From the IMG/VR virus record IMGVR_UViG_3300044796_000657, positions 310,001 to 374,000 of that record: 64,000 nucleotides of DNA; one strand, 5' to 3'. Below are positions 5,564-54,844 of this stretch, piece after piece (the stretch's first letter is position 1; the number at the start of each line of letters is the position of its first letter). Below the pieces are notes generated by a model. That model was not told the DNA's origin. It did not search any database and was given only the letters and a program-made list of their open reading frames with translations. The translations under genes and the position numbers were made by a program.

Positions 5564-5614
5564 CCCTCACCCCACTCTTACTTTCCCCTTAACATTGAAA
5601 CAGGAGATTGCGTC

Positions 5615-19346: not shown

Positions 19347-20752
19347 ATGTATCTGACATCATTAATAAGTTCAAAATTCAAAATGCCAAAACGAGACTGA
19401 GAATAGCAGTTATTGGTGATACGCTCGTTGATGAATACCGTTACGGCCAAGTCAACCGGATTTCGCCCGAATTTCCCGTTCCGATATTAACTTCCGAGTC
19501 AGACGCCAAGGAATCTTGTCCCGGTGGCGCTGCGAATGTATGCCATCAAATGACACACATGAACGCCGAAGTCTTTCTCGTAGGCTTTGTGGACAATGTC
19601 ACACGTAAATTGTACGGTCAGCAAACCTTCAATATTGACTACTGCGTTGATTTGCCAAGCGGCTTTGTACCAATCAAAGTTCGATTTTATGAAGGCGACT
19701 TTCCTCTCCTGCGATGGGATATTGAAAGTCCTAACTATGGCGAAAAAGATTTAAGTGAATTGAGACGAAAAATTCTCATTAATTTTGAATCTCTCATCAA
19801 AGAGGGATTGAGTGCGGTCATTATTAGTGATTATAATAAAGGCATCTTTGACGAAGCTACCGCTCGTTCTCTCATGCAATTATGTACTTATTACCGCATT
19901 CCTACTATCGTTGATCCCAAGAAACCACCAGTGAGCAAATGGTTCGGGGCTACAGTCATTAAGCCAAATGCGGCTGAAGCCAAGACGCTAACTGGTGAAT
20001 CTACTATTTCATCTCAATTGAGTAAATTATGTGAAAATGCTCATACGAGTATGATCACCCAAGGCGGCGACGGTGTTATTTGCCAAATTGGAAAAGAAAT
20101 TTTTGAATACATGTCCCCCGTACCACGATCTAAGGAGGTGAACAGTGTTATCGGGGCGGGGGACTGTTTTATAGCAATGTTAACTCTTGGGATGTCGCAC
20201 GGTATGACAACTCAAGAAGCTGTAGCATTGGCATTTGAAGCCGGTGCTGTTTACGTTAAAGCAAGACATAATAAACCAATTCATCTTAATGAAATACTCG
20301 CAAGAGTTGATGTTGAAGGCTCTCGTATCGTCAAAGCCGAAGAGTTAAACTTTAACAAAAACGAACGTATTGTTTTCACAAATGGTTGTTTTGACGTTAT
20401 TCATGCTGGTCACTTGGATACTTTGAAATTTGCCAAATGTCAAGGTGATCGATTGATTGTCGGTGTTAATTCGGATGCTTCTGTCAAGCGACTTAAGGGT
20501 GATAAGCGACCCATTTATGGACAAGATGAACGTGCTAGATTTTTAGCGTCAATGTATTTCGTAGATCATGTTGTGATTTTTGATGAAGATACACCAGCCG
20601 AATTGATTAATAAAATTCAGCCACACATTGTTGTTAAGGGCGGCGATTACTCTATTACGGATGTTGTTGCCGGTAATGCCAAAGTTGTTTTGTCGCCTCT
20701 CAGAAAAGGATACTCTTCAACTAATACAATTAATAAACTATCTGACGACTAA
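19343..20752 (+). CDS. hldE: Bifunctional heptose-7-phosphate kinase / heptose-1-phosphate adenylyltransferase
   Basis: PfkB half: GDTLVDEY, RISPEFPVP, GGAANV, SDYNKG and GAGD. C-terminal half: FTNGCFDVIHAGH, GVNSD, EDTP and VKGGDY. Confidence 0.93.
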   Translation: MNVSDIINKFKIQNAKTRLRIAVIGDTLVDEYRYGQVNRISPEFPVPILTSESDAKESCPGGAANVCHQMTHMNAEVFLVGFVDNVTRKLYGQQTFNIDYCVDLPSGFVPIKVRFYEGDFPLLRWDIESPNYGEKDLSELRRKILINFESLIKEGLSAVIISDYNKGIFDEATARSLMQLCTYYRIPTIVDPKKPPVSKWFGATVIKPNAAEAKTLTGESTISSQLSKLCENAHTSMITQGGDGVICQIGKEIFEYMSPVPRSKEVNSVIGAGDCFIAMLTLGMSHGMTTQEAVALAFEAGAVYVKARHNKPIHLNEILARVDVEGSRIVKAEELNFNKNERIVFTNGCFDVIHAGHLDTLKFAKCQGDRLIVGVNSDASVKRLKGDKRPIYGQDERARFLASMYFVDHVVIFDEDTPAELINKIQPHIVVKGGDYSITDVVAGNAKVVLSPLRKGYSSTNTINKLSDD

Positions 20753-39042: not shown

Positions 39043-40602
39043 TTACGAGTAACAGCAAGTTGTCTTAATTTTATTATCAAGATTTCGAGTGATTTTTTTA
39101 TTGGCCACTTTTTTGAACCCAATAATTTTATTAAGAAGTTTGGGATAGGTTTCAAAAAACTTTTTTACGTATGAATTGTCTTTGCCATCGTTTCTAAGAC
39201 TGTAGAGATTAACTTTACGACTAAAGGGCTTACCTTTTTCTATTGAAGATAAAAGGCTTTGTTGATCATGCTCATCTTTCCACTCATTTAGATTTTTGAT
39301 ATGACCTAAACCACCATATGCTTTATCAGCATTTTTGGCTTCTATTTCATTTTCATATATTGTGATTTCATACTCTTCTTCTTCTGACCACGTATTGGTG
39401 TTCCAAACTCCGCTAGGAATAAGATATTGATCTGATTCATAAAATGAAACAGCCTTTTCCATTTCTTTTTTATCGCAATATATTAAAAAAGTATCATCAA
39501 ATTTTGAATGTTTGTCTTGTCCCAAATAGCCACAACACCGACCCGCTACCTGTGCTATATTGTCAGCGTTAGATCTAGCACCCTCAATCCAGCCTTTAAT
39601 ATGTTTGGTTGTAGAAAGAGTCTTGCCTGCTCGTAAAGAGCCTAAAATAATGACTACAAATGGTTTAGGCGGAATTTTTCCCAATCTGTCATTTAAGGAT
39701 GAAATAGGAAAATGTCCTTTGCCTTTTTTGGAAGAATAAATTCTTACATCAATTTGATCGCCATACTTTTCAGCCAGCCATGACCTTAATAATGTTGGAT
39801 TTTCACCAACTGCTCTCACTATCAAGTAGCCATTACTTGATTCGCAATTATCAATAAAAACTTCTGCTTGTTTAACAAAGAAGTCAGTAGGTTTTTTGTC
39901 TCTACCAATAATTTTTTGAGATTGATGATATCGATTTTTCAATTTCAAATCACTCAATCCAAAATATTCCGGTGAGACTTTTATTGCTACTGTTGAAAAA
40001 ACGCCATTTTCAATATTTTCTTTGATGACAGCAGCATAAGGTGTCGCTGACACTGACAAAATAAAGGTATTTTGATTTTCCCATTCATGACTTTTAGAGC
40101 CGTACTTTACACCTCTTGCAGCAAAAAATTTATCAAGCGGCTTGTCCTTCTTCAAGGCGATATGGCATTCGTCATCAACAATAAGTCGACAATCAACATT
40201 TTTAGGTTCAAGTTCCGCTTGTGACAAATGGAGTAAATTAACTTTATTTGATAAGGCTGCATCTACCAGTCTATCATCAGTTTGGTTCAATAAGTCATTA
40301 TCAGCAATGTTGATGATGTAATCAATTTCATAGCTTTTGCCTTGTGACTCACAGTACTTGATGAACTCGTCAATAATTAAAGCGACGGTGCTGGTTTTGC
40401 CTTGTTGTGGTTGTGCTATCAATAAAACTGATTTTTTGTTGTTCTTGAAATTATCTATAACTTTAATAGAAGCTTCTGTTTGTTGAGGATAAACTTGTAG
40501 TTCGCCTATTTTTTTCATTCCAATTATTAATGGTTGTATTGGCTTTATTGGAGCAGGAATGCCGAACATATGCGTGAATGTCGTATTTGAAGAAGTTGTC
40601 AT
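39043..40602 (-). CDS. SF2 (DExH) helicase/ATPase-like protein
   Basis: AQPQQGKT, VDDECH, SVSATP, SLRAGKT and QVAGRCCGY; AT-rich. Confidence 0.7.
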   Translation of the reverse strand: MTTSSNTTFTHMFGIPAPIKPIQPLIIGMKKIGELQVYPQQTEASIKVIDNFKNNKKSVLLIAQPQQGKTSTVALIIDEFIKYCESQGKSYEIDYIINIADNDLLNQTDDRLVDAALSNKVNLLHLSQAELEPKNVDCRLIVDDECHIALKKDKPLDKFFAARGVKYGSKSHEWENQNTFILSVSATPYAAVIKENIENGVFSTVAIKVSPEYFGLSDLKLKNRYHQSQKIIGRDKKPTDFFVKQAEVFIDNCESSNGYLIVRAVGENPTLLRSWLAEKYGDQIDVRIYSSKKGKGHFPISSLNDRLGKIPPKPFVVIILGSLRAGKTLSTTKHIKGWIEGARSNADNIAQVAGRCCGYLGQDKHSKFDDTFLIYCDKKEMEKAVSFYESDQYLIPSGVWNTNTWSEEEEYEITIYENEIEAKNADKAYGGLGHIKNLNEWKDEHDQQSLLSSIEKGKPFSRKVNLYSLRNDGKDNSYVKKFFETYPKLLNKIIGFKKVANKKITRNLDNKIKTTCCYS

Positions 40603-40606
40603 GTCG

Positions 40607-41629
40607 TTAATTTTTTTCTTTCTTTTTTCTAATGGTTTTTGATTTTATTATTTGTCTTTGATGTACCGGATCATTGTCTAGTTTAGCATCAATAAACTTC
40701 ATAATCAATTTCTGTTTTTCTTGATTGATTGCTGGTTCAGCGATTGGATATGGGCAATTTTTAATTTTTTGATAAACATAGTTTCTCGCCCACTTGCATT
40801 CAGGAATGCTTTGATAATCACCTAAATTTTTCGTCATAAATCTTAATCTGATACGGTTGTTTTTGTTTTCTATACCACAACCTTCGCAGTATTCAATTAA
40901 TTCGGGCAAAAATTTATCTACCAAATCTTTTTTGCGAGACAAATAAGGGCCGTCGGAATAAATGAAATTCAAAAAAGTTAACACATCGGCCTTTTTGTTC
41001 CAAACGATACTCCACGCAGCATTAACGGATTTTGTGTTTTTGCTCTTTTGTGATGGATGTTGAGGGAGTTTGGTGATTTTTCCGATTTCATCATTCATCA
41101 TATCAACAAACATCTTTGTGCCAATTAGCGTAACACCTACAAGGTTTTTCTTATTTTTGAAAATACAACCATCGCCATCAAAATATCCACGTATAAAATG
41201 AGAGAGATATTGTTCTTCAATATTTGGAAAAGGCAAATTGAGATAGGTTTTATTGGGCAAAATGCCGTGTTTGTTTACAAGACAAGAAATTAACTTTTTG
41301 CTGTAAATGGCAATTTTTGTATAAGGCTTAACGTAATAGCCTTTTTTATGCCAATAGCCATCCAGTCTGGTAATTTTATGTTTTGAATGAATTGCATTTC
41401 TCAAACCAACTACGATCTCTTCATCTTCGGTAGTGCATCCAATTTGTAATTTTCCATCACTGATATTGCCATCAGCCCATATCCACCCAAGATAATAAGC
41501 CATTTCTGTTGACCAATTTTCAAAATAATCATGTTTCATTCCATAAAATAGTATCATGGAATGAAAATGGGCATATTTCACGTAAGTTTCCAAAACTGAC
41601 AGAGGGTTCGATAATCGCACCGATGGCAA
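40607..41629 (-). mobile_element. Free-standing LAGLIDADG homing endonuclease gene
   Basis: YYLGWIWADG and FIRGYFDGDG; the start is probably 41539. Confidence 0.85.
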
Positions 41630-42384
41630 TGTCGCCCGGTATTGCCATGAACTTTATCAGGATCAAGGGATTCGATTTCCTTGTATCTTGCCAAGAGTTT
41701 TTCAGGAACACTCAAAAGTTGTTCTTCGCTGAAAGTTGTCGGTATCAACTTATTGTCGTCCAGATAAAATAAGGCAGCACGGATATTTTTAGCCGGAACC
41801 TTGAATGTATTCATGACAACATAGCAATAGCACATTAACTGCAAGTCTTGGCCAATGGTTCGTTCGTTCTTGCGCCAACCACCTGTTTTTGTCGTCTTAT
41901 AATCCAGCAGGAAAAACTCGTCGTCTTTGCGGATCATGCGGTCAATGAAGCCGGTCATTTTGCGGTTATGTCCATCCATGTCCAAATCAAACTTCCATTC
42001 AAGTTCACCACCATAACCAATCTTTTCAGTTAGTCGCTTATAGTATCCCAACATTCTTATGAGTTTGTTTTGATATTCGGGATCAAATCTCGGAGCCTTC
42101 TTGCCGGGCTTCGTGACCATGACTTGCTTATCCTTGTCAAAATATGATACCGGTGGTTCTAAATCAATCTTGCCGCTGAGAACGTCTTTAGCAACTATTG
42201 AAAGTTCTAACGAACCTCTTGCTCTCGTATGTTCTTCAATGATCTTGTGGATGGCTTTCCCGAAGGCGAAATAAATTGGCTCTGGTACCGGAGACACGGT
42301 TTCCAAGTGATACCGAAATTTGTACTTTTGTGGGCATTCAGTGAAACAACTTTCACGAGAAATGGATATGTGGTTTATTTTCAT
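41578..42384 (-). CDS. PD-(D/E)XK (RecB/Cas4-like) exonuclease
   Basis: SISRESCFTECPQKY, FGKAIH, GFIDR, LDYKT, QLMCY and C-terminal CHRCDYRTLC. Confidence 0.85.
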   Translation of the reverse strand: MKINHISISRESCFTECPQKYKFRYHLETVSPVPEPIYFAFGKAIHKIIEEHTRARGSLELSIVAKDVLSGKIDLEPPVSYFDKDKQVMVTKPGKKAPRFDPEYQNKLIRMLGYYKRLTEKIGYGGELEWKFDLDMDGHNRKMTGFIDRMIRKDDEFFLLDYKTTKTGGWRKNERTIGQDLQLMCYCYVVMNTFKVPAKNIRAALFYLDDNKLIPTTFSEEQLLSVPEKLLARYKEIESLDPDKVHGNTGRHCHRCDYRTLCQFWKLT

Positions 42385-42433
42385 AATGTCTCTGGTATAA
42401 TCTAAACAACGTTTGTACATTAAATAAGTTACT

Positions 42434-43441
42434 ATGTCAATATCTTTTGAATCGTTCTACAATTGGTGCGTCAGCAAATTCGGCGATCACAACGTTAAAG
42501 TTTCTGGTCCGGAAATTTGTCTCAACTCACCATTCTCGCCAAAACACAACCCAGATTCAGGGCATCACTGTTGGTGTAATCCTGATAAGAATGCTTACAA
42601 CTGCTGGAAAACTAATGAACACGGTTCGCTTCATCAATTAGTAGCTGAATTCGAGCCATGCGATTTAGCGGATGCCGATGAAATACTCGGCAATACAAAT
42701 CTAATTCGTGGACTTGAGGATAAACTCAGACAGTTGTTCACAAATAAAAAAGAAGAGCGACCGACGGTTAAGTCTTCTATTATACTACCCATTGAAGCAG
42801 TTGCCTATAGCAGTTTGTCATCTATTCACAAAGACAGGGTGCATGATTATATGGCGAAGCGGCAACTTCCGCCAAATGATCTTTTCTATTGTCATACTGG
42901 ACGATACCGAGAAAGAATCGTTATTCCTTATTATGGGCCAAAGGGCGAGTTGATCTATTTCAATGGGCGTGACATCAGTAGTAAGGGTACAGGGCCACGG
43001 TATTTGGGGCCACCAAAAGAGATTGGAATTGGCAAGGGTGATGTATTGTGGATGAAGTCTTGGCCAACTCAAGGAAAGATTTATTTGTGCGAAGGAGAAT
43101 TTAACGCTATGTCATTAGGTCAAGCAAATCTTCCGGCTGCAGCATGTGGTGGTAAGAACCTGAGTGACAAACAGTTAACTATGCTTCAACCATATGATGT
43201 AACGTTTTGTTTTGACAATGACAAATATGGTCAAGAAGCACTACATAAATTCAGTGCATACAAGAAGTCGTTTCACGGCGGCAAGTCGACAACCGTAGGT
43301 TTCGTACTGCCCCCAACGGGTTTCAAGGACTGGAACGATTTGCTGATCCACGGGGGAGCCGGGGCGTTAAACTATTACGTCACTTCTCAGGAGAAGCAAC
43401 TTGATTGGGGCGATTTTATGCGAATGCGATTACGTCTTTAA
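42434..43441 (+). CDS. DnaG-type DNA primase (T4 gp61-like)
   Basis: Zinc-binding domain, RIVIP, YFNGR, TOPRIM CEGEFNA, FDND..G and KDWND. Confidence 0.9.
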   Translation: MSISFESFYNWCVSKFGDHNVKVSGPEICLNSPFSPKHNPDSGHHCWCNPDKNAYNCWKTNEHGSLHQLVAEFEPCDLADADEILGNTNLIRGLEDKLRQLFTNKKEERPTVKSSIILPIEAVAYSSLSSIHKDRVHDYMAKRQLPPNDLFYCHTGRYRERIVIPYYGPKGELIYFNGRDISSKGTGPRYLGPPKEIGIGKGDVLWMKSWPTQGKIYLCEGEFNAMSLGQANLPAAACGGKNLSDKQLTMLQPYDVTFCFDNDKYGQEALHKFSAYKKSFHGGKSTTVGFVLPPTGFKDWNDLLIHGGAGALNYYVTSQEKQLDWGDFMRMRLRL

Positions 43442-43450
43442 AGGCCCAAA

Positions 43451-43951
43451 ATGAAAAAGCGCAAGAGCCAAGGGAAGAGTTCCAAGCGTGAGAAAGTAGA
43501 CGACATCAGAAGTTTCTTTCTTGCTTGTGAATTCAAACCCAATTCAGATTTATTTTCCGTCCTCGATCCCTTCGCCTATGACATTAAGCCAGCCTTTATT
43601 CATGGTTCTCTCGGTATCGTAGCATACGAACCAGAAGCCTATGCCATTGTAGATGCCGATGAGAAAAGCCCACCTCTCATGGGTTATATTATGACCATTA
43701 CTCATCCTGATACCATTTTATTGCTAGATAAAATCAAGGGTGTCAATGGGCCAACCGGCTTCAATTACCACACCAAAAAATTAGTACACGTTTATACGGA
43801 TATTGATGTAGTTCAAAATGCTTGGATTTATATCTTGAGCGAATCAGCATTGGATGCTTATGAACAAATTGAGCAAGTAGAATTCGGTCTATGGGACGAG
43901 GAAGACGAACAACAAATCAGCTTCCTTGAAAAAATGGGAGATGGGATGTGA
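43451..43951 (+). CDS. Gamma-glutamylcyclotransferase-like (AIG2-like) protein
   Basis: Pattern ...LLDKIKG..Y..KLV.V...AWIY. Confidence 0.5.
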   Translation: MKKRKSQGKSSKREKVDDIRSFFLACEFKPNSDLFSVLDPFAYDIKPAFIHGSLGIVAYEPEAYAIVDADEKSPPLMGYIMTITHPDTILLLDKIKGVNGPTGFNYHTKKLVHVYTDIDVVQNAWIYILSESALDAYEQIEQVEFGLWDEEDEQQISFLEKMGDGM

Positions 43952-44298
43952 ATTATCAAGGTGTAGATTTTTTCCAAGAAAACCATCAAACTTTTTCACT
44001 CCACGACGGTGATAGAAGTAGCGAAGAAGTATTGGCTAAGATTTCGCCACACATTAGACTCTACGAAGGCTTTGAACTAAAATTATTGGAAATGTCTCGC
44101 ACTGCTAAAAGTCTCGTTATGAATGCGACTTTGTGGCCACTGACATTAAAAGTTAAAGTTTATCACAAAAAGAAACTCTCTTATGACGTAATTATCACAG
44201 CCAATGTGTCATATTACGAATTGGGGTATCGGGGCAATAGTGACCAATATCCAATACGCATCGTTTTTCACTGTTTGGATATTGAATGCAATGATTGA
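43948..44298 (+). CDS. Hypothetical protein
   Basis: 116-aa ORF, coupled to its neighbours. Confidence 0.55.
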   Translation: MNYQGVDFFQENHQTFSLHDGDRSSEEVLAKISPHIRLYEGFELKLLEMSRTAKSLVMNATLWPLTLKVKVYHKKKLSYDVIITANVSYYELGYRGNSDQYPIRIVFHCLDIECND

Positions 44299-44662
44299 AA
44301 GCTATAATTTTTTCATCGGAAAAGTTTGCACCATATTAACGACAAGTGTCGCTCTCCCTATCAAAGACGCTTTATCTGGTGCATTGTATTTTTCTGGTTT
44401 GGTTGCCAAAGTAGACGACAATGGTATCTGGATTCAACAACTTGAAACCAATACTATGAGTTATTTTACTTTTCCAATAGTCGGCATCGTACAAGAACAA
44501 GCGGTTGCTAAAAGTGATCCCAATTACGAAAAGATCAAAGAAGAAATTGAAAAGCAAAAACCTGTTGCCCCGCCTAAACCGGTACCGCCAAACTTTACGT
44601 CTGTTAGCGATTTGACTCAAAAAGCCAAAGAATTAAGACGACGAAAAGAAGAAGGTAAGTAA
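44291..44662 (+). CDS. Hypothetical protein, possibly Sm/LSm-like fold
   Basis: FIGKVCTI...FSGLVAKVDDNGIWI pattern; start at 44291. Confidence 0.5.
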   Translation: MIESYNFFIGKVCTILTTSVALPIKDALSGALYFSGLVAKVDDNGIWIQQLETNTMSYFTFPIVGIVQEQAVAKSDPNYEKIKEEIEKQKPVAPPKPVPPNFTSVSDLTQKAKELRRRKEEGK

Positions 44663-44672
44663 TAGGCATTGC

Positions 44673-44694
44673 CTAGGCAGAAAATTCTGCCTAG
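44673..44694. terminator. Hairpin between convergent genes
   Basis: CTAGGCAGAA-AA-TTCTGCCTAG; no clear U-tract. Confidence 0.5.
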
Positions 44695-44708
44695 ACCGTT
44701 AATCTTCA

Positions 44709-45185
44709 TTAGTCAGCCAAAAATTCTGAAATCTTTTTCAAGCTCATAATTGCTGAATCAAAATCGTGGTATTGCGAGTTAATGTATTCCAAGTTGAGCG
44801 AATCAAACTTTTCCACATCTTCACTGCCTACTTCAAAATAGAAGTTCCTAGTTTTGCGACCTACACACTTGAAGCCGTGCATCTTGACAAATGCAGCAGC
44901 ACCCAAATCGGAAACACTCTTGCGAATCATCCCATTTGGTTCCATCAATCGCTCTTGAACTTTTTTGAGGCTCATAATACATGCGTCAAAGTCATGGTAT
45001 GGTGAATTGATGTATTCAAGATTTAAATCTTCGAATTTATTTAATCCTTCATCTGCTACGTCAAAATAAAATGAACGACCTTTGCGGCCTACACATTTAT
45101 ATCCTTTCATTCTGGCAAATGCCGCTTCACCTAAATCATCGACTGGTCGACGTGTTACTTTCCGAACTTGCTTTTCCATATTCAT
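44709..45185 (-). CDS. Protein made of two tandem ~60-aa domains (DUF5659-like)
   Basis: DLGEAAFARMKGYKCVGRK...YINSPYHDFD..IMSLKK is repeated as DLGAAAFVKMHGFKCVGRK...YINSQYHDFD..IMSLKK. Confidence 0.75.
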   Translation of the reverse strand: MNMEKQVRKVTRRPVDDLGEAAFARMKGYKCVGRKGRSFYFDVADEGLNKFEDLNLEYINSPYHDFDACIMSLKKVQERLMEPNGMIRKSVSDLGAAAFVKMHGFKCVGRKTRNFYFEVGSEDVEKFDSLNLEYINSQYHDFDSAIMSLKKISEFLAD

Positions 45186-45249
45186 TCCTGCTTGCTTAAT
45201 ACTGTCACTACAATTTATAGAGGTTTCATAGTAATTATTTACTACGAAA

Positions 45250-45789
45250 TTACCCAATGGCGTTTTCCGCCGCAATCAATTGTCTATACGATGTTAAGTT
45301 ATCACACCATTTTATAAATTTTTCGTATGACATTTTGCCTTTAGCCCAATTGCATGTTTTGCAACACGGCAAAGAATTTTCGGTGGTATATCCTTGACCG
45401 GGTACTTTTTGATCTATCCCTAACCAATGATAATATCCCCAATTGGTAATGTTAGTTTTGTATAAACGATCAGGATTTGTACCGCAATAATGACAATTGC
45501 TAGAAGTTATGTCTTTGAATTCTTTCAAAGTCAAAGACATATAATTTCTCTTGCTATAAATATTAAATAATGCTTCAAGGCCACTTTGACCTTTGGGTTT
45601 ATTTTTACATTTTTTGCATACTGTATCTCTTTTTATATGACTTCTAGTTGATATTTTTATTGCATCGCAATTTTTACAATGAATTTTCCATACACTGGTC
45701 TTGCGATTAAATTCCATTTGTTTGATTTCAATAAATTCATCAACTATCCAATTTTTTAAATTATCAATCGTTTGTATGAATTTACTCAT
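45250..45789 (-). mobile_element. Free-standing HNH homing endonuclease gene
   Basis: CHYCG...GIDQKVPGQGYTTENSLPCCKTCNWAKG; ATGA overlap with the actin-like gene stop. Confidence 0.8.
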
Positions 45790-46787
45790 TGTAAAGCATT
45801 CTCTGCTGCCATTAAGCATCCTTTGCCGACACTAAATAAGTGATCTTCGGGACGCTTAACTTCACCAACAGGAATCGACCAATCCGCTTCTTTGATACCT
45901 TGTTTGAACAATTCAACAAAGCCGGGAGGACTCGCAGTACCACCACCCAAAATAACATCTAAAGGCTGACCGGGCACCGCTTTGGCACCAGCATCAACAA
46001 TCGCCTTCTTGATTGCGCTCGTCGTCTTTTGGATCAAGATTTCATATTGACTCTTAATTGCTCTTTCAACTAATGAAGTCGGCGTTTTGGTCAAATCGAT
46101 CTTCGTCTTTTCTTGATTGATGACTGTCGGACTTTCGCCGCACGCCTTTGCTGCCATCTTGTCAATCCAGTCGCCACTATTCACAAGCGACATTTGAAAT
46201 ACCGGTTGAGCAAAAATGGAATAACACAAGTTAACCATACCAGCACCGAAACTGATACCAACACCGGTATGCATCTTATTACCTAATTCGGCAAAAACCA
46301 ATGCTAAGGCTTCGTTGATTGGAAACGCTTGAAGTCTCTTATTGTTGACGTTGTACGCCTTGAAAATAGAGAGCAAGACGTTACTGTGAAAGTCCGCATC
46401 CGTTTCGGTGTTGATAGCGTTGGCAGGAACCGAATAGTAAAGAATTTCTTTGTCTTTTTCAATTTCGCCGATCAGAGAGTGAATCATGATCTTGAGAATT
46501 TCAAAAGCATTACGTTCTTTGGGGTTCAAACACCCATCAGCCATAGGACGCTTCAGATTTAAAAGCGGAATAGTATAAGCCATATCGATAGCCGGTTGAC
46601 CGACTACGTAAGCCACTTTATCACGCTCAATCATCTTAACTTTATCTTTGAGCATATTGAACATGAAACGATTTTCCAACGGCAATTCAATGAATGCATT
46701 TACCGTCTTCTTGCTCTTGATTTCATTCGTTTCATTACGCTTGCTACAAATAAGGTTGTAGGTACCCGCATCAAATCCGATTGCCAT
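45786..46787 (-). CDS. Actin-fold ATPase (MreB/ParM/MamK-like)
   Basis: Phosphate-1 IGFDAGT, INEALA, phosphate-2 GISFGAG, adenosine motif ILGGGT and SVGKG. Confidence 0.88.
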   Translation of the reverse strand: MAIGFDAGTYNLICSKRNETNEIKSKKTVNAFIELPLENRFMFNMLKDKVKMIERDKVAYVVGQPAIDMAYTIPLLNLKRPMADGCLNPKERNAFEILKIMIHSLIGEIEKDKEILYYSVPANAINTETDADFHSNVLLSIFKAYNVNNKRLQAFPINEALALVFAELGNKMHTGVGISFGAGMVNLCYSIFAQPVFQMSLVNSGDWIDKMAAKACGESPTVINQEKTKIDLTKTPTSLVERAIKSQYEILIQKTTSAIKKAIVDAGAKAVPGQPLDVILGGGTASPPGFVELFKQGIKEADWSIPVGEVKRPEDHLFSVGKGCLMAAENALQ

Positions 46788-46884
46788 TCTTCACCTTTTG
46801 TTCGTGTAAAATATAATAGTTATAAGTCTAAAATAGATTGCTTCCTGTATATAATTAACCGCAAATTAGATTGGTTGGTGTGAT

Positions 46885-47226
46885 ATGGGTGGCATGACAA
46901 GAAGTCCCGAATCGTGGTGGGAGTATTTTAAATCCCTTTTTAATATCAAAAATTATTATATCGATGGCACCGTTACGGTATGTGCTGGTTTCCATCAAAT
47001 TGAAATTCCTACGGTTACTAGCAATCCATGTTCTGTTTTTCTTAGCATCGAAGAGCCAGATAGCGCAACGACAACTTGTGTAGGCGATCTCAATTGGGCT
47101 ACTGCTAAGGTTCAACTCAACGGCTTCACTTTATACGCCAACATCAAATCTAACACTTGTACTATCAAATACGTTATTCAATATGACTGCGATAATTCTA
47201 ATCCTCAAAGCCCCATTGGTATATGA
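46885..47226 (+). CDS. Hypothetical beta-rich protein
   Basis: 113-aa ORF coupled to the downstream gene. Confidence 0.5.
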   Translation: MGGMTRSPESWWEYFKSLFNIKNYYIDGTVTVCAGFHQIEIPTVTSNPCSVFLSIEEPDSATTTCVGDLNWATAKVQLNGFTLYANIKSNTCTIKYVIQYDCDNSNPQSPIGI

Positions 47227-48212
47227 AAACTGTAACTGTTTTGGGTTGGTATGGCAAAAGCAATTGTGGTGATGAAAGCTACAAAATGGCTTTTCCTGCC
47301 GTGTTCAAAAATTATAAATTCAATTTCGTCAACAAGATTACCGATCACAATAGTGATGCTTACATTTTGGGTGGCGGCGATGTCTTGGCCCCTAGTTTCT
47401 TGAATCAATTAGTTAACGTCAAAAAACCAAAACACATTATTTCTGTTTCTGCTAACGAAAAAGTAGATCCGGAACTCTTGAAGGGTTACGCCAACATCTT
47501 TGTACGTGAAAAACAGTCGTTGGATATTTTGACCAAAAAGGGGGTCAAGGCTTCTTATGCCCCCGATGTTGCTTTCGCCTTATCAGGCGATCCAGTTCGT
47601 GGTCTTGAATTGATGCGAAATCACTTCGTTGAACAGAAACGGGATATGTACGAACGGCGAATCGTTGTTGTTATCAATGGCTTCTTGGCGGAAGATCACG
47701 CCAACGGCTTTGATGTACGGCGTGCTTATAACTTTCAAGACTTGACATATAAGTTGTCTCACGTTCTGGATCATACGAACGCCAGTTTCGTTTTTGTTCC
47801 ATTTGGTCAAGAATTGCCGTGGGATGATCGGGTAACAAATATGTGGATTGCGAGTAAAGCAAAATTCTGGAAAAAGAATTTATGTATCAGCGAATCCAAC
47901 GTTCAAAATGTTCTGGATATTATCTCAAGTGCTGATGCAATAGTCTCAACAAGATTACATTCTACCATTTTTGCTATGACAACAAAAACGCCTATTGTAG
48001 ACATTACTCACAATCATAAAAATCGTTGGTTGTTGGAAACAGTTGATAAAAATCATTTTTCTGTTAATTATCGTGCGATTGATGAAGGTGCTTTGAAATT
48101 AAAAATAAATGATTTGATTTCAAATCGTAATATACATGCAAAAGAACTCTCCATTTTGCTAGATAAACAAAAGGAAATCTTGGGAGGGTTGAGTAATGTA
48201 TGTCTCGTTTGA
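47223..48212 (+). CDS. Polysaccharide pyruvyltransferase family protein
   Basis: GWYGKSNCGDE, ILGGGD, IFVRE, PDVAF and STRLHSTI. Confidence 0.85.
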   Translation: MKTVTVLGWYGKSNCGDESYKMAFPAVFKNYKFNFVNKITDHNSDAYILGGGDVLAPSFLNQLVNVKKPKHIISVSANEKVDPELLKGYANIFVREKQSLDILTKKGVKASYAPDVAFALSGDPVRGLELMRNHFVEQKRDMYERRIVVVINGFLAEDHANGFDVRRAYNFQDLTYKLSHVLDHTNASFVFVPFGQELPWDDRVTNMWIASKAKFWKKNLCISESNVQNVLDIISSADAIVSTRLHSTIFAMTTKTPIVDITHNHKNRWLLETVDKNHFSVNYRAIDEGALKLKINDLISNRNIHAKELSILLDKQKEILGGLSNVCLV

Positions 48213-49473
48213 TCGGCATAACGTAATTACTGCTGTCTCTGAAGTTCCATTCAATTCCAATGGCCAAAGTGTAGTTCGAATCCACATTAACAAGGGTATG
48301 GATCTGAACCAAATCGTGGGGCGACTCTTGAGTACTAAACCAAAAAAACAGATAAAAGATTTGAAGGTAGCAGCAATATGCAATTGGGGCGATGCCTGCG
48401 GTATCGCCACTTACAGTAAATTTTTGTTCGATGAAATCAAGAAGAAGGTAGCTGATCTTCATGTATTTTCCGAAATCATACTCGAAGAACTGCCAGAAGA
48501 GGCTAATGTAACACGCTGTTGGAAGCGTGGTCAAAATCCATCAAAGCTTCTGGAGCAACTCAAAAAATACGATCCGGATTTTGTCATTATCCAGCACGAA
48601 TTTGGCATTTTTCCAAAAGCGGGATATTTCTTACAATTGCTTCAAGGACTTGAACAATATCCTTATGTGTTAACTTTGCACTCTGTATATGAACATCTTG
48701 ACAAAGCAGTATGTACTTCGGCTATTAAACACATTGTCGTCCATACCGAAGAAGGCAAAGAGGTTCTTAAGAAGACTGGGAATAATAACGATATTTTTGT
48801 AGTGCCTCACGGATGTGTTAGCATTCCTCCAGCAGAACGCATAGAATTATGGAATATTTTTCAAACCCCCTACGCTATCGTGCAATTCGGATTTGGTTTT
48901 TATTACAAAGGCGTTGATACGATTTTGGAAGCTATTGCTATCCTCAAAAAAACCAACTACGAAAAATACAAAGAACTCTTCTACTGCTATCTTTGCAGCG
49001 AGAATCCCCATGCCAATGCCATCCATACAAACTATTACAACTTTTTGATGGACAAGGTGAAAGAGTTGGATATTTCGGAGAACGTTGCCATTATTCGCAA
49101 GTTCCAAACCGAGCAGACAATTAACCATTACTTACGAACAGCTAAACTCGCAATCTTCCCATATCGTAGCGATCCGAACAATGTTGTTTATGGTGCTTCC
49201 GGTGCCAGTCGTATTGCTATGGCCAATGGTATTCCTGTTATTGTCGGCAAGAACCATCAGTTTGATGATTTGGAAGGTGTTTTGCCAAGAGCCGGTACAC
49301 CACAAGAATTGGCTAATGAAATTGACAAGATTTTCTCTAACGACAAACACCGCAAAGCAGTTATTGATCGTTCGTTAAAGTATATCGAAAATACGACTTG
49401 GAGCAAATGTGCCGATAAGTATTTGGATCTTTACGAAAAAGTATTACCCACCAACATCTTCGCCAAAATTTGA
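48196..49473 (+). CDS. GT4 glycosyltransferase
   Basis: CGIATYS, IQHEFG, TLHSV, PHG, FGFGFYYKG, FPY, ASGASRIAMANGIPVI. Confidence 0.85.
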   Translation: MYVSFDRHNVITAVSEVPFNSNGQSVVRIHINKGMDLNQIVGRLLSTKPKKQIKDLKVAAICNWGDACGIATYSKFLFDEIKKKVADLHVFSEIILEELPEEANVTRCWKRGQNPSKLLEQLKKYDPDFVIIQHEFGIFPKAGYFLQLLQGLEQYPYVLTLHSVYEHLDKAVCTSAIKHIVVHTEEGKEVLKKTGNNNDIFVVPHGCVSIPPAERIELWNIFQTPYAIVQFGFGFYYKGVDTILEAIAILKKTNYEKYKELFYCYLCSENPHANAIHTNYYNFLMDKVKELDISENVAIIRKFQTEQTINHYLRTAKLAIFPYRSDPNNVVYGASGASRIAMANGIPVIVGKNHQFDDLEGVLPRAGTPQELANEIDKIFSNDKHRKAVIDRSLKYIENTTWSKCADKYLDLYEKVLPTNIFAKI

Positions 49474-49689
49474 TAATAATTCCGTTGGACTATCAAAGTC
49501 CGGTATGATGAATTGAGTGCTCTCAACAGGGTCAATCTTCTTGAGAGCTATCGGACTATGCGGTGTTGCTCCGATGCTCAATGAACCATCTTGATTCAAA
49601 GTGATCGTTAAATTCAAGTTAACCGTTATTTCGCCTTGAACGGTTTGAACTCTCTCAGTGATAATTTGTGATTTGATGACCTGAACCAT
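49444..49689 (-). CDS. Hypothetical late protein
   Basis: GTAAATA upstream at 49696-49702. Confidence 0.55.
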   Translation of the reverse strand: MVQVIKSQIITERVQTVQGEITVNLNLTITLNQDGSLSIGATPHSPIALKKIDPVESTQFIIPDFDSPTELLSNFGEDVGG

Positions 49690-49698
49690 ACACCGTAT

Positions 49699-50658
49699 TT
49701 ACTTAGCAGTAGGCCATTTTACCATTATATCATCAAGCGATTGAAGAATTTCCTTCGCTGTCAATTCTGTAATACAAGGTTTTGATATTTGAGTATGATG
49801 ACATTTGTGACATTCACCCCAATTATAACACGGCCCACAATCCCATCCTTCATCACGATGTTTCTGAATTAAGTTCCACTTCTCATAATACTTGCCATAT
49901 ACCTTACCATCGGCCCATGAGAAAATTCCGACCATTGGAATTCCTAGACCACCAGCAATATGAAATGCGGCGCTGTCTACACTTATGACATAATCAGCAG
50001 CTCCGACCAATGCCATGAATTGTTTGTTATTTTTGCCGTGTAGCACTTTTCCATCAAAACCGGGAATGGCCCTTGAGTGAATTCCATAGTAGCTTAATCC
50101 CCGCTCTTGTAAACCTTTGCAGACTTGATCAATTTGCTCAACAGTTAAGTTTTTGCTGGAAATGGCCGATATGGGAGCGAAGCAAACTTTGGCACCTTGC
50201 GTTAGTTCTTTTGCTTCGGCTAACTCAGGTTCGCTAATTTTCATATGCATATTATGCCGAGTTAATTCTAATCCGCACCAATTGGCCCAAATATCGCTTC
50301 GGTGTGGTGCGGAATACGGAGAGGCTATGGCTTCAATTCTACCGCATATAGTTGTTGTGTCGTAATGAATAATCAATTTACTCATGTCGTAGTTGTTAAA
50401 GTCAACGACTTCGTCTACGAATGGATGTCCTTCAATTAGGGACATAAATTGTGGTGGACAACCGAATATAACTTTGATGTCTGGATTCAATAATTTGAAA
50501 TCTTCAAAAATCATCCTATGCATGAGGATGTCACCAATGCCACCGGTTCCTCGCATAATGAATACGGTTTGTCGTCTATCATAATAATCTCTAAGAGACC
50601 ATCGTTTCTTCATTGGGGGAATTCGATGGAGTCCAGAAGCAAGTCGTAATGTTTTCAT
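49699..50658 (-). CDS. GT9 (ADP-heptose-dependent heptosyltransferase-like) glycosyltransferase
   Basis: GGIGDILM, GHPFVDEV, ISVDSAAFHIAGGLGIPMVGIF and a C-terminal CGPC..C..C..PC cluster. Confidence 0.85.
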   Translation of the reverse strand: MKTLRLASGLHRIPPMKKRWSLRDYYDRRQTVFIMRGTGGIGDILMHRMIFEDFKLLNPDIKVIFGCPPQFMSLIEGHPFVDEVVDFNNYDMSKLIIHYDTTTICGRIEAIASPYSAPHRSDIWANWCGLELTRHNMHMKISEPELAEAKELTQGAKVCFAPISAISSKNLTVEQIDQVCKGLQERGLSYYGIHSRAIPGFDGKVLHGKNNKQFMALVGAADYVISVDSAAFHIAGGLGIPMVGIFSWADGKVYGKYYEKWNLIQKHRDEGWDCGPCYNWGECHKCHHTQISKPCITELTAKEILQSLDDIMVKWPTAK

Positions 50659-52990: not shown

Positions 52991-54844
52991 ATGAAAATAA
53001 TGTTTTTGTCAGATCGCAAAGACGATTTACTGGAAACTCTATATGAATATTTTTCCAAGATGTATCCGTGCGAATATGGCATGAATACCACCGAAGCAGA
53101 TTTATTCGTCGCAAATTGCATAACTAATTTTCCGAATAAGACGATTTACTATGCGACTGATCCAAGTGATTATTTGTCCGACATCAGTACTCGGCGATTC
53201 AAAATAGGGTTTTTTCAAAAAACTAGGAGCATATTATGCCCATCTTTGTATCTCGCACAAACTTTTTATCGCAGGTTCAAAATACCTTGTGAAATACAAT
53301 ATCCACATTATTTGACAAAAGAAACATCACCTCAAAACATAATTTGTCATCCCAAGTTCGCATCTCAACACTCTATTGATGTTAATGAATTGTCACATGA
53401 AAACTTAAAATTGTTAGATGGCAACTTATCTCATGCTAAATTATATATTTCAAATGATGGGCCAATTGATGGTTCCCTTATAGAAGCATCGGCAAGAGGG
53501 GTTCCGGTTATTGCTCCGAATGATGTTTGGGTGCAAGAATTTTTAATTAACGGCGATCAGACTTTTCGATGGGGAACAACAGAGTGGATCGCAGCCACTA
53601 AAAAATGCTTGCGTAATATTGGAAGCAAAGTGCCGAGTGGTAAATATTCAAACATGTCTACATTACATGACAAAATTCAAAAGGCATTAGAAAAGAAGCC
53701 TACCGTTCTGCTTGATTTTCAACCAAAACCAGTCAAGCCCCCGCAAGTTTTTGGCAGACGACCAAATCGCACTACGAGAGTAGAACCACGTCGACCAATT
53801 ATGTTGCCTGAAATATCAGACAGAACAATTTACATCAGCGGCAGTTGTATCGGCATATCGGGATACGACAATTTGGTTTATGAAACAATTCGTGGGTTCA
53901 AATCTATTGGTGCTGACGTTCGCATCAATGCCAACAATCAAATTAATTATAATGTTTGTCCGGTATGGTTTCAAGATATTCACGCAGCCAAACCGGCCAA
54001 TGCGTGGGAAATTATCATTACCCCACCGTGTAATTTGAATTTTATCACACCGGGAAAGCGATCTGTTGTTTTGACAATGTGGGAAACGGATTATCTGGAA
54101 CCCGAATGGGTGAAGATGTTGAATAATGCCCATATGGTATGTGTACCGAGTCAGTGGGCTGTTGAGTGCTTCAAGAAGTGTGGTGTCACGGTTCCTATTG
54201 CTTGTGTTCCTCTCGGATATGATCCACTCATATTCAATCCTTTGGGTGAATTTCCAAAATTGTGTACCTTTGGTACAGCGGCAGCACTGACCGCTGGCGG
54301 TTTGCGTAAAAACACAAGATATATCATAGACTTATTCCGCAAAGCATTTCCTGAAGAAGCAGACGTAAGACTTAAAGTTAAAGTAAGTCCAGCTTGCCCA
54401 TTGCCGGAATTTCAGGATTCAAGAGTTGAAATCATTCGGGAGATGTTGCCCCCTGCTAAATTGGCTGATTGGTATCGATCCATTACTGCTTTTGTTAACG
54501 CTTCGTACGCTGAAGGGTTTGGACTACACCTAATAGAGTCAATGGCATGTGGTCGGCCATTGATTTCCACATACTATAGTGCCGTAACTGAATATTTTGA
54601 TGATAGTGTTGGTTGGACGGTAGATCATGAAATTATCAAAGCGGCGGGTGGTGCTTACTCTGGACATTGGGGAAAGCCGATAGAACAATCTATCATCAAC
54701 AACATGAGACAGGTTTATAGCGATAAAGAAGCGGTTAAAAATAAAGGTGAGGCGGCTTATCTGAAATCACGGGATTTCACTTGGAAGAAATTCGGTCATA
54801 AGTTAATAGAGGCTATTGGGAAAAATGGAGTGGTGAATTTATGA
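52991..54844 (+). CDS. Two-domain GT4-type glycosyltransferase
   Basis: C-terminal domain WETD, VPSQW, LRKN, AEGFGLHLIESMACGRP; degenerate N-terminal GT domain (EASARGVPVI); TTAAATA 4 nt upstream. Confidence 0.85.
   Translation: MKIMFLSDRKDDLLETLYEYFSKMYPCEYGMNTTEADLFVANCITNFPNKTIYYATDPSDYLSDISTRRFKIGFFQKTRSILCPSLYLAQTFYRRFKIPCEIQYPHYLTKETSPQNIICHPKFASQHSIDVNELSHENLKLLDGNLSHAKLYISNDGPIDGSLIEASARGVPVIAPNDVWVQEFLINGDQTFRWGTTEWIAATKKCLRNIGSKVPSGKYSNMSTLHDKIQKALEKKPTVLLDFQPKPVKPPQVFGRRPNRTTRVEPRRPIMLPEISDRTIYISGSCIGISGYDNLVYETIRGFKSIGADVRINANNQINYNVCPVWFQDIHAAKPANAWEIIITPPCNLNFITPGKRSVVLTMWETDYLEPEWVKMLNNAHMVCVPSQWAVECFKKCGVTVPIACVPLGYDPLIFNPLGEFPKLCTFGTAAALTAGGLRKNTRYIIDLFRKAFPEEADVRLKVKVSPACPLPEFQDSRVEIIREMLPPAKLADWYRSITAFVNASYAEGFGLHLIESMACGRPLISTYYSAVTEYFDDSVGWTVDHEIIKAAGGAYSGHWGKPIEQSIINNMRQVYSDKEAVKNKGEAAYLKSRDFTWKKFGHKLIEAIGKNGVVNL

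What the first reader, a model, noticed from the sequence alone, without database searches (positions are those of the whole stretch)
44709..46787. Actin-like ATPase with a tandem-domain neighbour: a possible phage cytoskeleton or partition system
All actin-fold nucleotide-binding motifs are intact. Downstream, once the inserted HNH gene is ignored, lies a protein made of two copies of a small domain, a plausible adaptor as ParR is to ParM. The pair sits next to the primase and exonuclease genes. Known phage filament systems are mainly tubulin (PhuZ, TubZ) or the AlpC-type actin. An MreB/MamK-like filament in a T4-like lytic phage could position replication or assembly sites or block host division.
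Basis: partly seen in the sequence, partly recalled or inferred. Interest (0 to 1): 0.62.

Follow-up and report, generated by a model that had tools for sequence, protein, structure and literature searches.

The report
Huge-phage actin gene with conserved partner
A 430-kb peat-soil phage encodes an actin-type filament protein of the volactin family. Next to it lies a small two-domain protein of unknown fold, and the pair is conserved across a whole clade of huge phages, so it is a likely but untested phage-made cytoskeleton.

Summary
Window 45786-46787(-) encodes a 333-aa actin-fold ATPase. Window 45250-45789(-) is a free-standing HNH endonuclease inserted only in this genome. Window 44709-45185(-) encodes a protein made of two copies (62% identical) of a ~72-aa domain. 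The actin is neither MreB nor ParM. It is a full-length member of Pfam Volactin (193 bits against a cut-off of 35), and its model is closest to MamK, MreB, BeeR and actin. The genome is a huge tailed phage: 430 kb, 37 tRNAs, a Gp23-like head gene and no tubulin. In 53 of the 54 related loci with sequence beyond the actin stop, the small domain lies just downstream on the same strand, as one copy or as a tandem. The tandem form arose at least three times, which points to a dimer as the working unit. The partner model is confident (pLDDT 92) but matches no known fold. It is not basic and is not RHH or HTH, and no centromere-like repeat array was found. My best reading is a phage actin filament plus a dimeric cofactor or adaptor that positions replicating phage DNA or assembly sites. 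That makes it analogous to AlpAC, ParMR and PhuZ, but not a member of those families. The function is inferred, not shown.

The parts
45786..46787 (-). Volactin-family actin-like ATPase gene (333 aa, P0001)
   Evidence: Pfam PF25216 matches at E 1e-56 over its full length. The AF2 model has pLDDT 90.3 and pTM 0.88. Foldseek ranks MamK 5ljv first (TM 0.74), then MreB, BeeR and actin. More than 1100 relatives were found, the top 120 at 57-89% identity. There is an RBS before the ATG.
45250..45789 (-). Free-standing HNH homing-type endonuclease inserted between the actin and partner genes (179 aa from the ATG that overlaps the actin stop; the maximal ORF runs to 45819)
   Evidence: phrog_1035 endonuclease VII/HNH matches at E 7.6e-14. 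ATGA start/stop overlap. It is single-copy in the 430-kb genome and absent from all related loci. The closest relative, L004, has only 147 bp at this junction.
44709..45185 (-). Partner gene: tandem of two ~72-aa alpha+beta domains (158 aa; the maximal ORF starts at TTG 45275)
   Evidence: The repeats are 62% identical. The domain HMM hits both halves at E ~1e-43. The AF2 model has pLDDT 91.7 and pTM 0.83, with each half folding as b-a-b-b-a-a. It lies downstream of the actin gene on the same strand in 53 related loci. No Pfam or PHROG family matches.
44673..44694 (.). Perfect 10-bp inverted repeat (CTAGGCAGAA / TTCTGCCTAG) just after the partner's stop, between convergent genes. It is a probable bidirectional terminator that ends the module.
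   Evidence: Repeat I25; sequence read.
46788..46884 (-). 97-bp spacer upstream of the actin gene holding two copies of CAATCTAWTTT, 33 nt apart. This is a low-confidence candidate promoter or operator.
   Evidence: Repeat D3. The 11-mer occurs only twice on both strands of the whole 430-kb genome, both times here. It is not conserved upstream of L004's actin, so the evidence is weak.
49444..49689 (-). 81-aa protein (cluster c2) that directly precedes the actin gene in 51 of 58 related loci. Here a 2.6-kb opposite-strand glycosylation gene insert (46885-49473) separates it from the actin.
   Evidence: Synteny clustering. HMM hit in the genome at G000 359447-359698, E 5e-8. No Pfam or PHROG family.
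42434..43441 (+). DnaG-type primase (Toprim), a conserved neighbour of the module
   Evidence: Pfam Toprim_2 E 4.6e-11; phrog_47 E 1e-41. Syntenic in 43 of 58 loci.
41578..42420 (-). PD-(D/E)XK (Cas4-like) exonuclease, a conserved neighbour
   Evidence: Pfam PDDEXK_1 E 2e-28; phrog_69. Syntenic in 35 of 58 loci.
44204..44662 (+). 152-aa protein of unknown function (cluster c4), convergent with the partner gene and conserved in 48 of 58 loci
   Evidence: No Pfam or PHROG hit.

Best explanation
The window comes from a huge tailed phage found in peat. It carries a two-gene module that is conserved across a large clade of huge phages with contigs up to about 630 kb.

Shown:
- The first gene encodes an actin-fold ATPase of the volactin family.
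- The second gene encodes a small alpha+beta domain protein with no known fold relative.
- The partner occurs either as a single domain or as a covalent tandem.
- In this genome an HNH homing endonuclease has landed between the two genes.

Inferred mechanism:
- The actin polymerises with ATP into dynamic filaments, as its archaeal relative volactin does.
- The partner works as a dimer, or as a pseudo-dimer in the tandem form. It binds the filament as a cofactor or adaptor that nucleates it, caps it or couples it to cargo.
- Together they place replicating phage DNA or the replication/assembly site inside the infected cell. This would be the role that the tubulin PhuZ plays in nucleus-forming jumbo phages and that AlpC/AlpA plays for prophage CGP3.

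Polymerisation, the actin-partner contact and the cargo are all untested.
For: Family and fold:
- Pfam Volactin scores 193 bits against a cut-off of 35 over the full length.
- The AF2 model is confident, and all its nearest structures are filament formers: MamK, MreB, BeeR and actin.
- H. volcanii volactin forms dynamic filaments in vivo (PMC10869688).

Phage identity:
- The genome is 430 kb with 37 tRNAs and a tmRNA.
- It has a Gp23-like head gene and a large terminase.
- It has no tubulin.

Conservation of the pair:
- 49 IMG/VR loci, 2 GenBank huge phages and 7 loci in MAGs carry relatives.
- The partner domain lies downstream on the same strand in 53 of the 54 loci with sequence beyond the actin stop. 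The median gap is 68 nt and 7 loci have overlapping stop and start.
- This adjacency survives rearrangements on both sides.
- The phage actins form one tight clade, separated by a long branch from cellular volactin-family genes (99% support).

Dimer inference:
- The tandem form arose at least three times independently.
- The tandem model packs as one unit (pTM 0.83).

Link of the family to DNA:
- Two Acidobacteriota volactin-family actins are fused to an HU/IHF-type DNA-binding domain.
- The phage module sits in a conserved primase/exonuclease block.

Precedent:
- AlpC/AlpA is a phage actin plus a co-transcribed adaptor needed for efficient replication (PMC4446434).

Possible expression:
- A peat metatranscriptome from another study holds 100%-identical contigs over 29 of 30 bins of window 43900-49800. 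DNA carry-over is not excluded.
Against: - No experiment or interface prediction links the partner to the actin.
- The partner is neutral to acidic (pI 5.2-7.8) and shows no RHH/HTH or other nucleic-acid-binding fold.
- No iterated repeat array lies next to the module or elsewhere in the genome. The only candidate site is a two-copy 11-mer that is not conserved in the closest relative.
- All related loci belong to one phage clade with strong overall synteny, so adjacency could partly reflect inherited gene order.
- A distant huge-phage volactin (LR745208, 30% identity) has no partner anywhere in its 485-kb genome. The actin can therefore exist without it.
- The canonical phosphate-2 Asp is Ser in the whole family. 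The effect on hydrolysis is unknown.
Confidence: 0.5

Rival explanations
1. The pair is a true partition system for an extrachromosomal (plasmid-like or pseudolysogenic) state of the huge phage. The actin pushes sister phage genomes apart at host division, and the partner is the centromere-binding adaptor, as in ParMRC.
For: - The gene order, actin then small partner on the same strand, is that of parM-parR.
- The dimeric nature of the partner fits centromere binders.
- IMG/VR labels the record 'provirus'.
- Volactin-family actins are fused to an HU-type DNA-binding domain in two bacteria.
Against: - No iteron or centromere array was found by the module or genome-wide.
- The partner is not basic and has no RHH/HTH fold.
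- The 'provirus' label is doubtful. The same protein is on record on a 614-kb contig, relatives are free 546-634-kb contigs, and the seven MAG hits fall in seven unrelated lineages, as misbinned phage contigs would.
- No integrase or plasmid replication evidence was sought or found here.
Confidence: 0.12
2. The phage actin acts on the host rather than on phage DNA. It co-polymerises with or replaces a host actin-like cytoskeleton to change cell shape or size or to block division during the long infection a huge phage needs. The partner tunes its assembly.
For: - Volactin itself is a cell-shape factor in H. volcanii (PMC10869688).
- Cellular volactin-family genes occur in 5 of 250 Acidobacteriota genomes sampled, a phylum I know from the literature to be common in peat (not tested here).
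- The neighbourhood upstream is rich in cell-envelope-type glycosylation genes.
Against: - The phage clade is only 28-31% identical to the cellular proteins and sits on a long branch. Co-polymerisation with a host protein is therefore unlikely.
- The family was not found in 200 Bacteroidota, 200 Actinomycetota or 250 Thermoproteota genomes sampled, so most candidate hosts lack it.
- The stable neighbours downstream are replication genes.
Confidence: 0.13
3. The actin works alone, or with other unknown factors. The small tandem-domain protein is functionally unrelated, for example a replication accessory or regulator, and sits beside the actin only through inherited gene order in this clade.
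For: - All loci come from one syntenic clade.
- 19 of 53 loci have an extra 500-1100 bp inserted between the two genes.
- LR745208 has the actin without the partner.
- The partner has weak, sub-threshold resemblance to DUF5659, a widespread viral domain not known to be linked to actins.
Against: - The actin-partner adjacency is the most persistent one in the neighbourhood: 53 loci, against 51, 48 and 43 for the next neighbours.
- It survives where both flanks have changed.
- 34 of 53 pairs are 150 nt or less apart, and some overlap.
- The partner occurs only once per genome in G000 and LR756511, always at this place.
Confidence: 0.2
4. The protein is a non-polymerising ASKHA-fold ATPase, such as a kinase or chaperone-like enzyme, and not a cytoskeletal element.
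For: - The phosphate-2 motif lacks the canonical Asp.
- The profile of the family finds no solved structure by sequence better than E 0.68.
Against: - It is a full-length match to a family whose founding member forms filaments.
- All top structural matches are filament-forming actins, not Hsp70 or sugar kinases.
- The four-subdomain architecture and size (333 aa) are those of MreB/MamK.
Confidence: 0.05

Closest known systems
Volactin (VolA, HVO_2015) of Haloferax volcanii; Pfam PF25216
   Same: Same Pfam family: full-length match at 193 bits against a cut-off of 35. The S-x-G-x-G-M-x-N phosphate-2 form is invariant in every volactin-family sequence I aligned (phage and Acidobacteriota; no haloarchaeal one), so whether volactin itself shares it was not checked. 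Volactin forms dynamically unstable filaments in vivo (PMC10869688).
   Different: Volactin is a chromosomal archaeal cell-shape factor with no known binding partner. The phage clade sits on a long separate branch, about 30% identical to the cellular family members I could fetch. It is always paired with the small-domain protein, which the cellular genes lack. I could not obtain the H. volcanii sequence itself for a direct comparison.
AlpC/AlpA of Corynebacterium glutamicum prophage CGP3
   Same: A phage-encoded actin-like protein co-transcribed with a small adaptor. Both are needed for efficient phage DNA replication, and the genes are expressed early (PMC4446434, PMC5539076). This is the closest functional analogue.
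   Different: - alpA lies upstream of alpC; here the partner lies downstream.
- AlpA binds 24 alpS repeats in its own promoter; no such array exists here.
- CGP3 is a small integrated prophage, not a huge phage.
- No sequence relationship was tested, because no AlpC or AlpA sequence was at hand.
ParM/ParR/parC type II plasmid partition (also Alp7A/Alp7R and AlfA/AlfB)
   Same: The actin gene is followed on the same strand by a small dimeric partner gene, and the module sits on a mobile genetic element.
   Different: - The actin is not ParM-like. Its nearest folds are MamK and MreB, and no ParM chain is in the top 50.
- The partner is not a ribbon-helix-helix protein and is not basic.
- No adjacent centromere repeats were found.
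PhuZ/TubZ tubulins of jumbo phages
   Same: A phage-encoded cytoskeletal polymer in very large phages, used to position the replicating genome (reviewed in PMC7950403).
   Different: PhuZ belongs to a different superfamily (tubulin). This genome has no tubulin-family gene. Whether this phage makes a nucleus-like compartment was not tested.
MamK and MreB
   Same: They are the best structural matches: TM 0.74 for MamK 5ljv and 0.68-0.71 for MreB.
   Different: Sequence identity is only 15-19%. Pfam MreB_Mbl does not match. A family profile reaches MamK only at E 0.68.
DUF5659 (PF18903), for the partner domain
   Same: Similar size. ESM-Atlas gives a structural TM of 0.71 and a feature score of 0.81 to DUF5659 clusters, which are mostly viral.
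   Different: The match is sub-threshold by sequence: 5 of 26 members, best E 0.012. The family HMM does not hit the partner in the genome. DUF5659 has no known function, and no paper in the library mentions it.

Membership tests
Volactin family (Pfam PF25216) | Score above the curated gathering threshold over the whole domain | tested here: met
   193.2 bits against a cut-off of 35, covering residues 1-328 against profile positions 1-321/321. Confirmed in the genome search.
Volactin family (Pfam PF25216) | Family-wide motif set, including the S-x-G-x-G-M-x-N phosphate-2 variant | tested here: met
   S179, G181, G183, M184 and N186 are invariant across phage, LR745208 and five Acidobacteriota members.
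Volactin family (Pfam PF25216) | Forms dynamic filaments in vivo | not testable with these tools
   Known only for H. volcanii VolA (PMC10869688).
Actin/ASKHA polymerising actins | Four-subdomain actin fold with phosphate-1, connect-1, phosphate-2, adenosine and connect-2 motifs | tested here: met
   The AF2 model has pLDDT 90.3. Foldseek probability is 1.00 to MamK, MreB, BeeR and actin. Motifs were read. Phosphate-2 carries Ser in place of the canonical Asp.
MreB/Mbl (Pfam PF06723) | Match to the family HMM | tested here: not met
   There is no PF06723 hit for P0001 at E <= 0.1 and none in the whole genome at E <= 0.01. Some relatives carry a weak precomputed PF06723 hit beside Volactin.
ParMRC type II partition system | ParM-family actin | tested here: not met
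   Pfam reports only Volactin. No ParM chain is among the 50 best structural matches.
ParMRC type II partition system | Small adaptor gene immediately downstream in the same operon | tested here: met
   53 loci have the partner downstream on the same strand, with a median gap of 68 nt. In the window the HNH insertion interrupts the pair.
ParMRC type II partition system | Adaptor is a ribbon-helix-helix (or HTH) DNA-binding dimer | tested here: not met
   The model topology is b-a-b-b-a-a. There is no RHH or HTH match; the best VIA Z is 6.0, to unrelated alpha+beta proteins. pI is 5.2-7.8. The dimer aspect is supported by recurrent tandem fusion.
ParMRC type II partition system | Centromere of iterated repeats next to the operon | tested here: inconclusive
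   No array was found in window 43900-47400 or by TRF genome-wide. The only candidate is a two-copy 11-mer unique to the actin's upstream spacer, and it is not conserved in L004.
ParMRC type II partition system | Adaptor binds the actin filament | not testable with these tools
   This needs biochemistry, or a validated multimer prediction with several protomers.
AlpAC (CGP3) | Adaptor gene upstream of the actin gene; adaptor binds repeats in its own promoter | tested here: not met
   The gene order is reversed here and there is no repeat array. AlpAC features are taken from PMC4446434.
PhuZ/TubZ phage tubulin systems | Tubulin/FtsZ-family GTPase | tested here: not met
   PF00091 finds nothing in the 430-kb genome, while 13 of 14 control genomes ring.
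DUF5659 (PF18903), partner domain | Match to the family HMM above the cut-off | tested here: not met
   The best E is 0.012, in 5 of 26 members. There is no hit on the partner in the genome search. Only an ESM-Atlas lead exists.

The most novel reading that the evidence does not exclude
A large clade of huge phages (about 400-630 kb) that lack tubulin has evolved its own actin-based cytoskeleton. It consists of a volactin-type filament plus a dimeric adaptor with a previously unseen fold, and it organises the replication or assembly compartment. This would be an actin counterpart of the PhuZ spindle, and the partner would be the first known binding factor for the volactin family.
Probability: 0.3. 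Interest if true: 0.8.

Novelty: new variant of a known kind. Interest (0 to 1): 0.62.

Why it matters
Phage-built cytoskeletons are known in detail only for the PhuZ and TubZ tubulins, and for one prophage actin (AlpC). This module is actin-based and is present in more than a thousand metagenomic sequences. It is a stable core feature of a clade of the largest known phages, and no paper in the searched library describes it.

If the module forms filaments, intracellular organisation by very large phages would have evolved at least twice, from different polymers. It would also supply a candidate regulator for the newly recognised volactin family, whose binding factors are unknown. Two bacterial volactin-family actins are fused to an HU-type DNA-binding domain, and that fusion independently points to a DNA-linked role for the family.

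Both proteins are small and give confident models, so polymerisation and binding tests should be straightforward.

Tried and rejected
- Complex prediction of actin plus partner returned 'no answer' (score 0.00, below the mark, controls not run). It counts neither for nor against binding.
- phmmer of the actin against PDB sequences found no hit at E <= 1. A family profile reached only MamK at E 0.68. Only fold comparison was informative.
- Fold searches with the partner model gave nothing above background. Foldseek on the PDB had no E <= 0.001. VIA-align wide gave a best Z of 6.0, to a designed cage protein, with BMC-, KH- and CutA-like alpha+beta hits at Z 4-5. BFVD hits had TM <= 0.3.
- The weak Pfam LidA_Long_CC hit and the JGI name 'regulator of sigma D' for partner homologues were rejected as spurious. 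They are below the cut-off and the model is not a coiled coil.
- The DUF5659 lead was tested and not confirmed.
- A megablast of 8 kb against GenBank phages found no match.
- PHROGs has no family for the actin or the partner.
- Tandem repeat, direct repeat and promoter scans found no centromere-like array, and promoter-like sites were not above shuffles.
- Literature searches for a phage volactin or a huge-phage actin found no description.
- I could not fetch the H. volcanii volactin sequence or other named actins (ParM, AlpC, crenactin).
- The large representative-protein search was not run, because Pfam and the word search had already placed the protein.
Full report
WHAT IS THERE

The finding covers three minus-strand ORFs.

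The first, 45786-46787, encodes a 333-aa protein (P0001) and has a good ribosome-binding site. Its only Pfam match is Volactin (PF25216), at E 1e-56 and 193 bits against a cut-off of 35, covering the whole profile. No PHROG family matches it.

The second ORF encodes an HNH/endonuclease-VII-type nuclease (phrog_1035, E 7.6e-14). Its probable ATG at 45789 overlaps the actin stop as ATGA.

The third, 44709-45275 as a maximal ORF, probably starts at the ATG at 45185. It encodes 158 aa made of two copies of a ~72-aa domain that are 62% identical. It ends at a perfect 10-bp hairpin.

- DnaG-type primase, 42434-43441
- PD-(D/E)XK exonuclease, 41578-42420
- LAGLIDADG endonuclease, 40607-41629
- SF2 helicase, 39043-40602

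THE GENOME

The window is bases 310001-374000 of a 430,229-bp IMG/VR virus record. The genome has GC 43%, 37 tRNAs and a tmRNA. It has a Gp23-like major head gene (window ORF 2144-3097) and a large terminase. No tubulin-family gene and no MreB_Mbl match were found. It is therefore a huge tailed phage with a T4-type capsid protein, not a classical T4-like phage.

The source is a peat metagenome. The same actin protein is on record on a 614-kb contig. Relatives lie on contigs of 546-634 kb. I therefore take the IMG/VR label 'provirus' to be a boundary-calling artefact. That is an inference.

THE ACTIN

An AlphaFold2 model built on 40 homologues is confident (pLDDT 90.3, pTM 0.88). Its best PDB matches are all filament-forming actins, at 15-19% identity:
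- MamK (TM 0.74)
- MreB (0.68-0.71)
- BeeR (0.71)
- eukaryotic actin

Sequence searches of the PDB find nothing significant.

Phosphate-1 (D6-x-G8-T9), the catalytic Glu region (N158-E159) and the adenosine motif (G282-G283-G-T) are canonical. Phosphate-2 is S179-F-G-A-G-M-x-N rather than D-x-G-x-G-T. Aligning phage proteins, the distant huge-phage copy and five Acidobacteriota proteins shows S, G, G, M and N to be invariant in all of them. This is the family's own form, not degeneration. The founding member, H. volcanii volactin, forms dynamically unstable filaments in vivo (PMC10869688).

DISTRIBUTION

The word search found more than 1100 relatives, and the best 120 were 57-89% identical. 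ESM-Atlas clusters of 'Volactin domain' proteins nearest to P0001 are 92-100% viral.

GenBank phages hold only two relatives, both uncultured huge phages. LR756511 (595 kb) is 57.5% identical and LR745208 (485 kb) is 29.8% identical. IMG/VR holds 49 loci, many on contigs of 100-390 kb.

Among 185,579 species genomes, a pattern scan found only seven loci. They lie in MAGs of seven unrelated lineages, one of them on a 546-kb contig, as misbinned phage contigs would.

Searching the Pfam family directly in sampled genomes gave:
- Bacteroidota: 0 of 200
- Other Actinomycetota: 0 of 200
- Other Thermoproteota: 0 of 250
- Acidobacteriota: 5 of 250

The five Acidobacteriota genes are high-GC and only 28-31% identical to P0001, and they have no partner domain nearby. 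In a tree the phage proteins form one tight clade on a long branch, apart from these cellular genes and from LR745208 (99% support).

THE PARTNER

I built an HMM from the two repeats plus a 76-aa ORF seen downstream of the actin in LR756511. It finds the domain immediately downstream of the actin gene, on the same strand, in 53 of 58 related loci. Four of the five exceptions end within 14 bases of the actin gene. The fifth has only 1.2 kb of downstream sequence.

The median gap is 68 nt. Seven pairs overlap. Nineteen have 500-1100 bp inserted between the genes, so this junction is an insertion hot spot, and the window's HNH gene is one such insert. The HNH gene is single-copy in this genome and absent from every relative.

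The partner occurs as a single domain (71-88 aa) or as a tandem (149-158 aa). A tree of the individual domains shows at least three independent duplications:
- in the window + L004 lineage
- in L041, whose two repeats are sisters inside a clade of single-domain forms
- in the L017/L009/L027 group

L023 may be a fourth case. Recurrent fusion of two copies argues that the functional unit is a dimer.

The AF2 model of the tandem is confident (pLDDT 91.7, pTM 0.83). Each half folds as beta-alpha-beta-beta-alpha-alpha. No solved or predicted viral structure matches above background.

There is no Pfam or PHROG family for it. A lead to DUF5659 from ESM-Atlas stays below threshold. The protein is neutral to acidic (pI 5.2-7.8).

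It occurs once in G000 and once in LR756511, always at this position. It is absent from LR745208, whose actin is only 30% identical.

CONTEXT

Clustering the ORFs of all loci shows a conserved order:
- GT9-like glycosyltransferase
- a 76-aa protein (c2)
- the actin
- the partner
- a ~125-aa protein on the opposite strand (c4)
- primase
- PD-(D/E)XK exonuclease

In the window and in its closest relative L004, an opposite-strand block separates c2 from the actin. In the window, c2 is at 49444-49689 and the block consists of a 113-aa protein, a pyruvyl transferase and a GT1 glycosyltransferase at 46885-49473. The actin-partner adjacency is the most persistent one and survives changes on both flanks.

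CENTROMERE SEARCH

No iterated repeat array lies in 43900-47400 or anywhere in the genome by TRF. The 97-bp spacer upstream of the actin holds two copies of CAATCTAWTTT, 33 nt apart. These are the only two copies on either strand of the 430-kb genome. The motif is absent upstream of L004's actin, so I treat it only as a weak candidate operator.

EXPRESSION

A peat metatranscriptome from a different study holds 100%-identical contigs over 29 of 30 bins of window 43900-49800, including the actin gene. Contigs give neither strand nor level, and DNA carry-over cannot be excluded. This shows the phage in a second sample. At most it hints at transcription.

INTERPRETATION

Shown:
- a real, conserved two-gene module in a clade of huge phages
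- volactin-family membership of the actin
- the HNH gene as a lineage-specific insertion
- a partner with a confident but unmatched fold, and recurrent tandem fusion

Inferred:
- ATP-dependent filament formation, from family and fold
- the partner acting as a dimeric cofactor or adaptor of the filament, from persistent operon-like linkage and the precedent of ParM/ParR and AlpC/AlpA (PMC4446434)
- a role in placing replicating phage DNA or assembly sites, from the replication-gene neighbourhood, the absence of tubulin and the HU-volactin fusions in two Acidobacteriota

The ParR analogy is positional only. Fold, charge and the lack of a repeat array all differ, so this is not a ParMRC member. 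The rival readings are plasmid-state partition, host cytoskeleton manipulation, an unrelated neighbour, and a non-polymerising ATPase. They are weighed in their own sections.

The one complex prediction allowed gave no verdict and is not used as evidence.

NOVELTY

Phage or prophage actins with adaptors are a known kind (AlpAC; ParM-like systems on plasmid prophages). Pfam and the Atlas already label these sequences automatically as Volactin-domain proteins. The new elements are the family (volactin-type), the setting (a core gene pair of huge, apparently tubulin-less phages) and a partner with no recognisable fold. No paper in the searched library describes any of these. I rate it a new variant of a known kind, with interest 0.62.

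Noticed in passing
L067:1048-2475 and L068:1129-2475 (Acidobacteriota genomes G055 and G226): Two cellular volactin-family actins are fused in frame to an N-terminal HU/IHF-type DNA-binding domain (PF00216 at E 3.5e-11 and 1.5e-9, plus PF25216). This actin-HU fusion ties the family to DNA.
   Followed up: partly
window 46788-46884: CAATCTAWTTT occurs only twice in the whole 430-kb genome on both strands, both times in the 97-bp spacer upstream of the actin gene and 33 nt apart. It is not conserved in the closest relative.
   Followed up: partly
window 40607-41629 (-) and 45250-45789 (-): Two different free-standing homing-type endonucleases, one LAGLIDADG and one HNH, are inserted within 5 kb in the replication gene block. 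The actin-partner junction also carries other inserts of 500-1100 bp in 19 of 53 related loci.
   Followed up: partly
window 46885-49473 (+), 49699-50658 (-), 19343-20752 (+), 52991-54844 (+): The density of glycosylation genes is unusually high: pyruvyl transferase, GT1, GT9/heptosyltransferase-like, heptose kinase/adenylyltransferase-like and another glycosyltransferase. The first block is an insert between c2 and the actin gene that is specific to the window/L004 lineage.
   Followed up: no
window 3953-7207 (+): A GC-rich segment (49-54% against about 40%) holds two paralogous ~530-aa genes that match phrog_200 ('lipoprotein'), just after the Gp23-like head gene.
   Followed up: no
G000 383702-427646 (outside the window): The genome has 37 tRNA genes, 33 of them in a 44-kb stretch, plus a tmRNA. 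ARAGORN calls one tRNA at 399874-399948 with a four-base anticodon (ggaa).
   Followed up: no
whole record G000: IMG/VR labels the 430-kb record 'provirus', yet the same actin protein is on record on a 614,480-bp contig and relatives lie on 546-634-kb contigs. The label probably reflects a wrongly called boundary inside a roughly 600-kb phage genome.
   Followed up: no
L004:7012-7158: In the closest relative, the 147-bp actin-partner spacer holds a short Cys-rich reading frame (about 48 codons, CxxC pairs) at the place where the window has the HNH gene.
   Followed up: no
window 43900-49800: A peat metatranscriptome from a different study contains 100%-identical contigs over nearly the whole stretch. 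The same phage is therefore present, and possibly active, in a second sample.
   Followed up: partly
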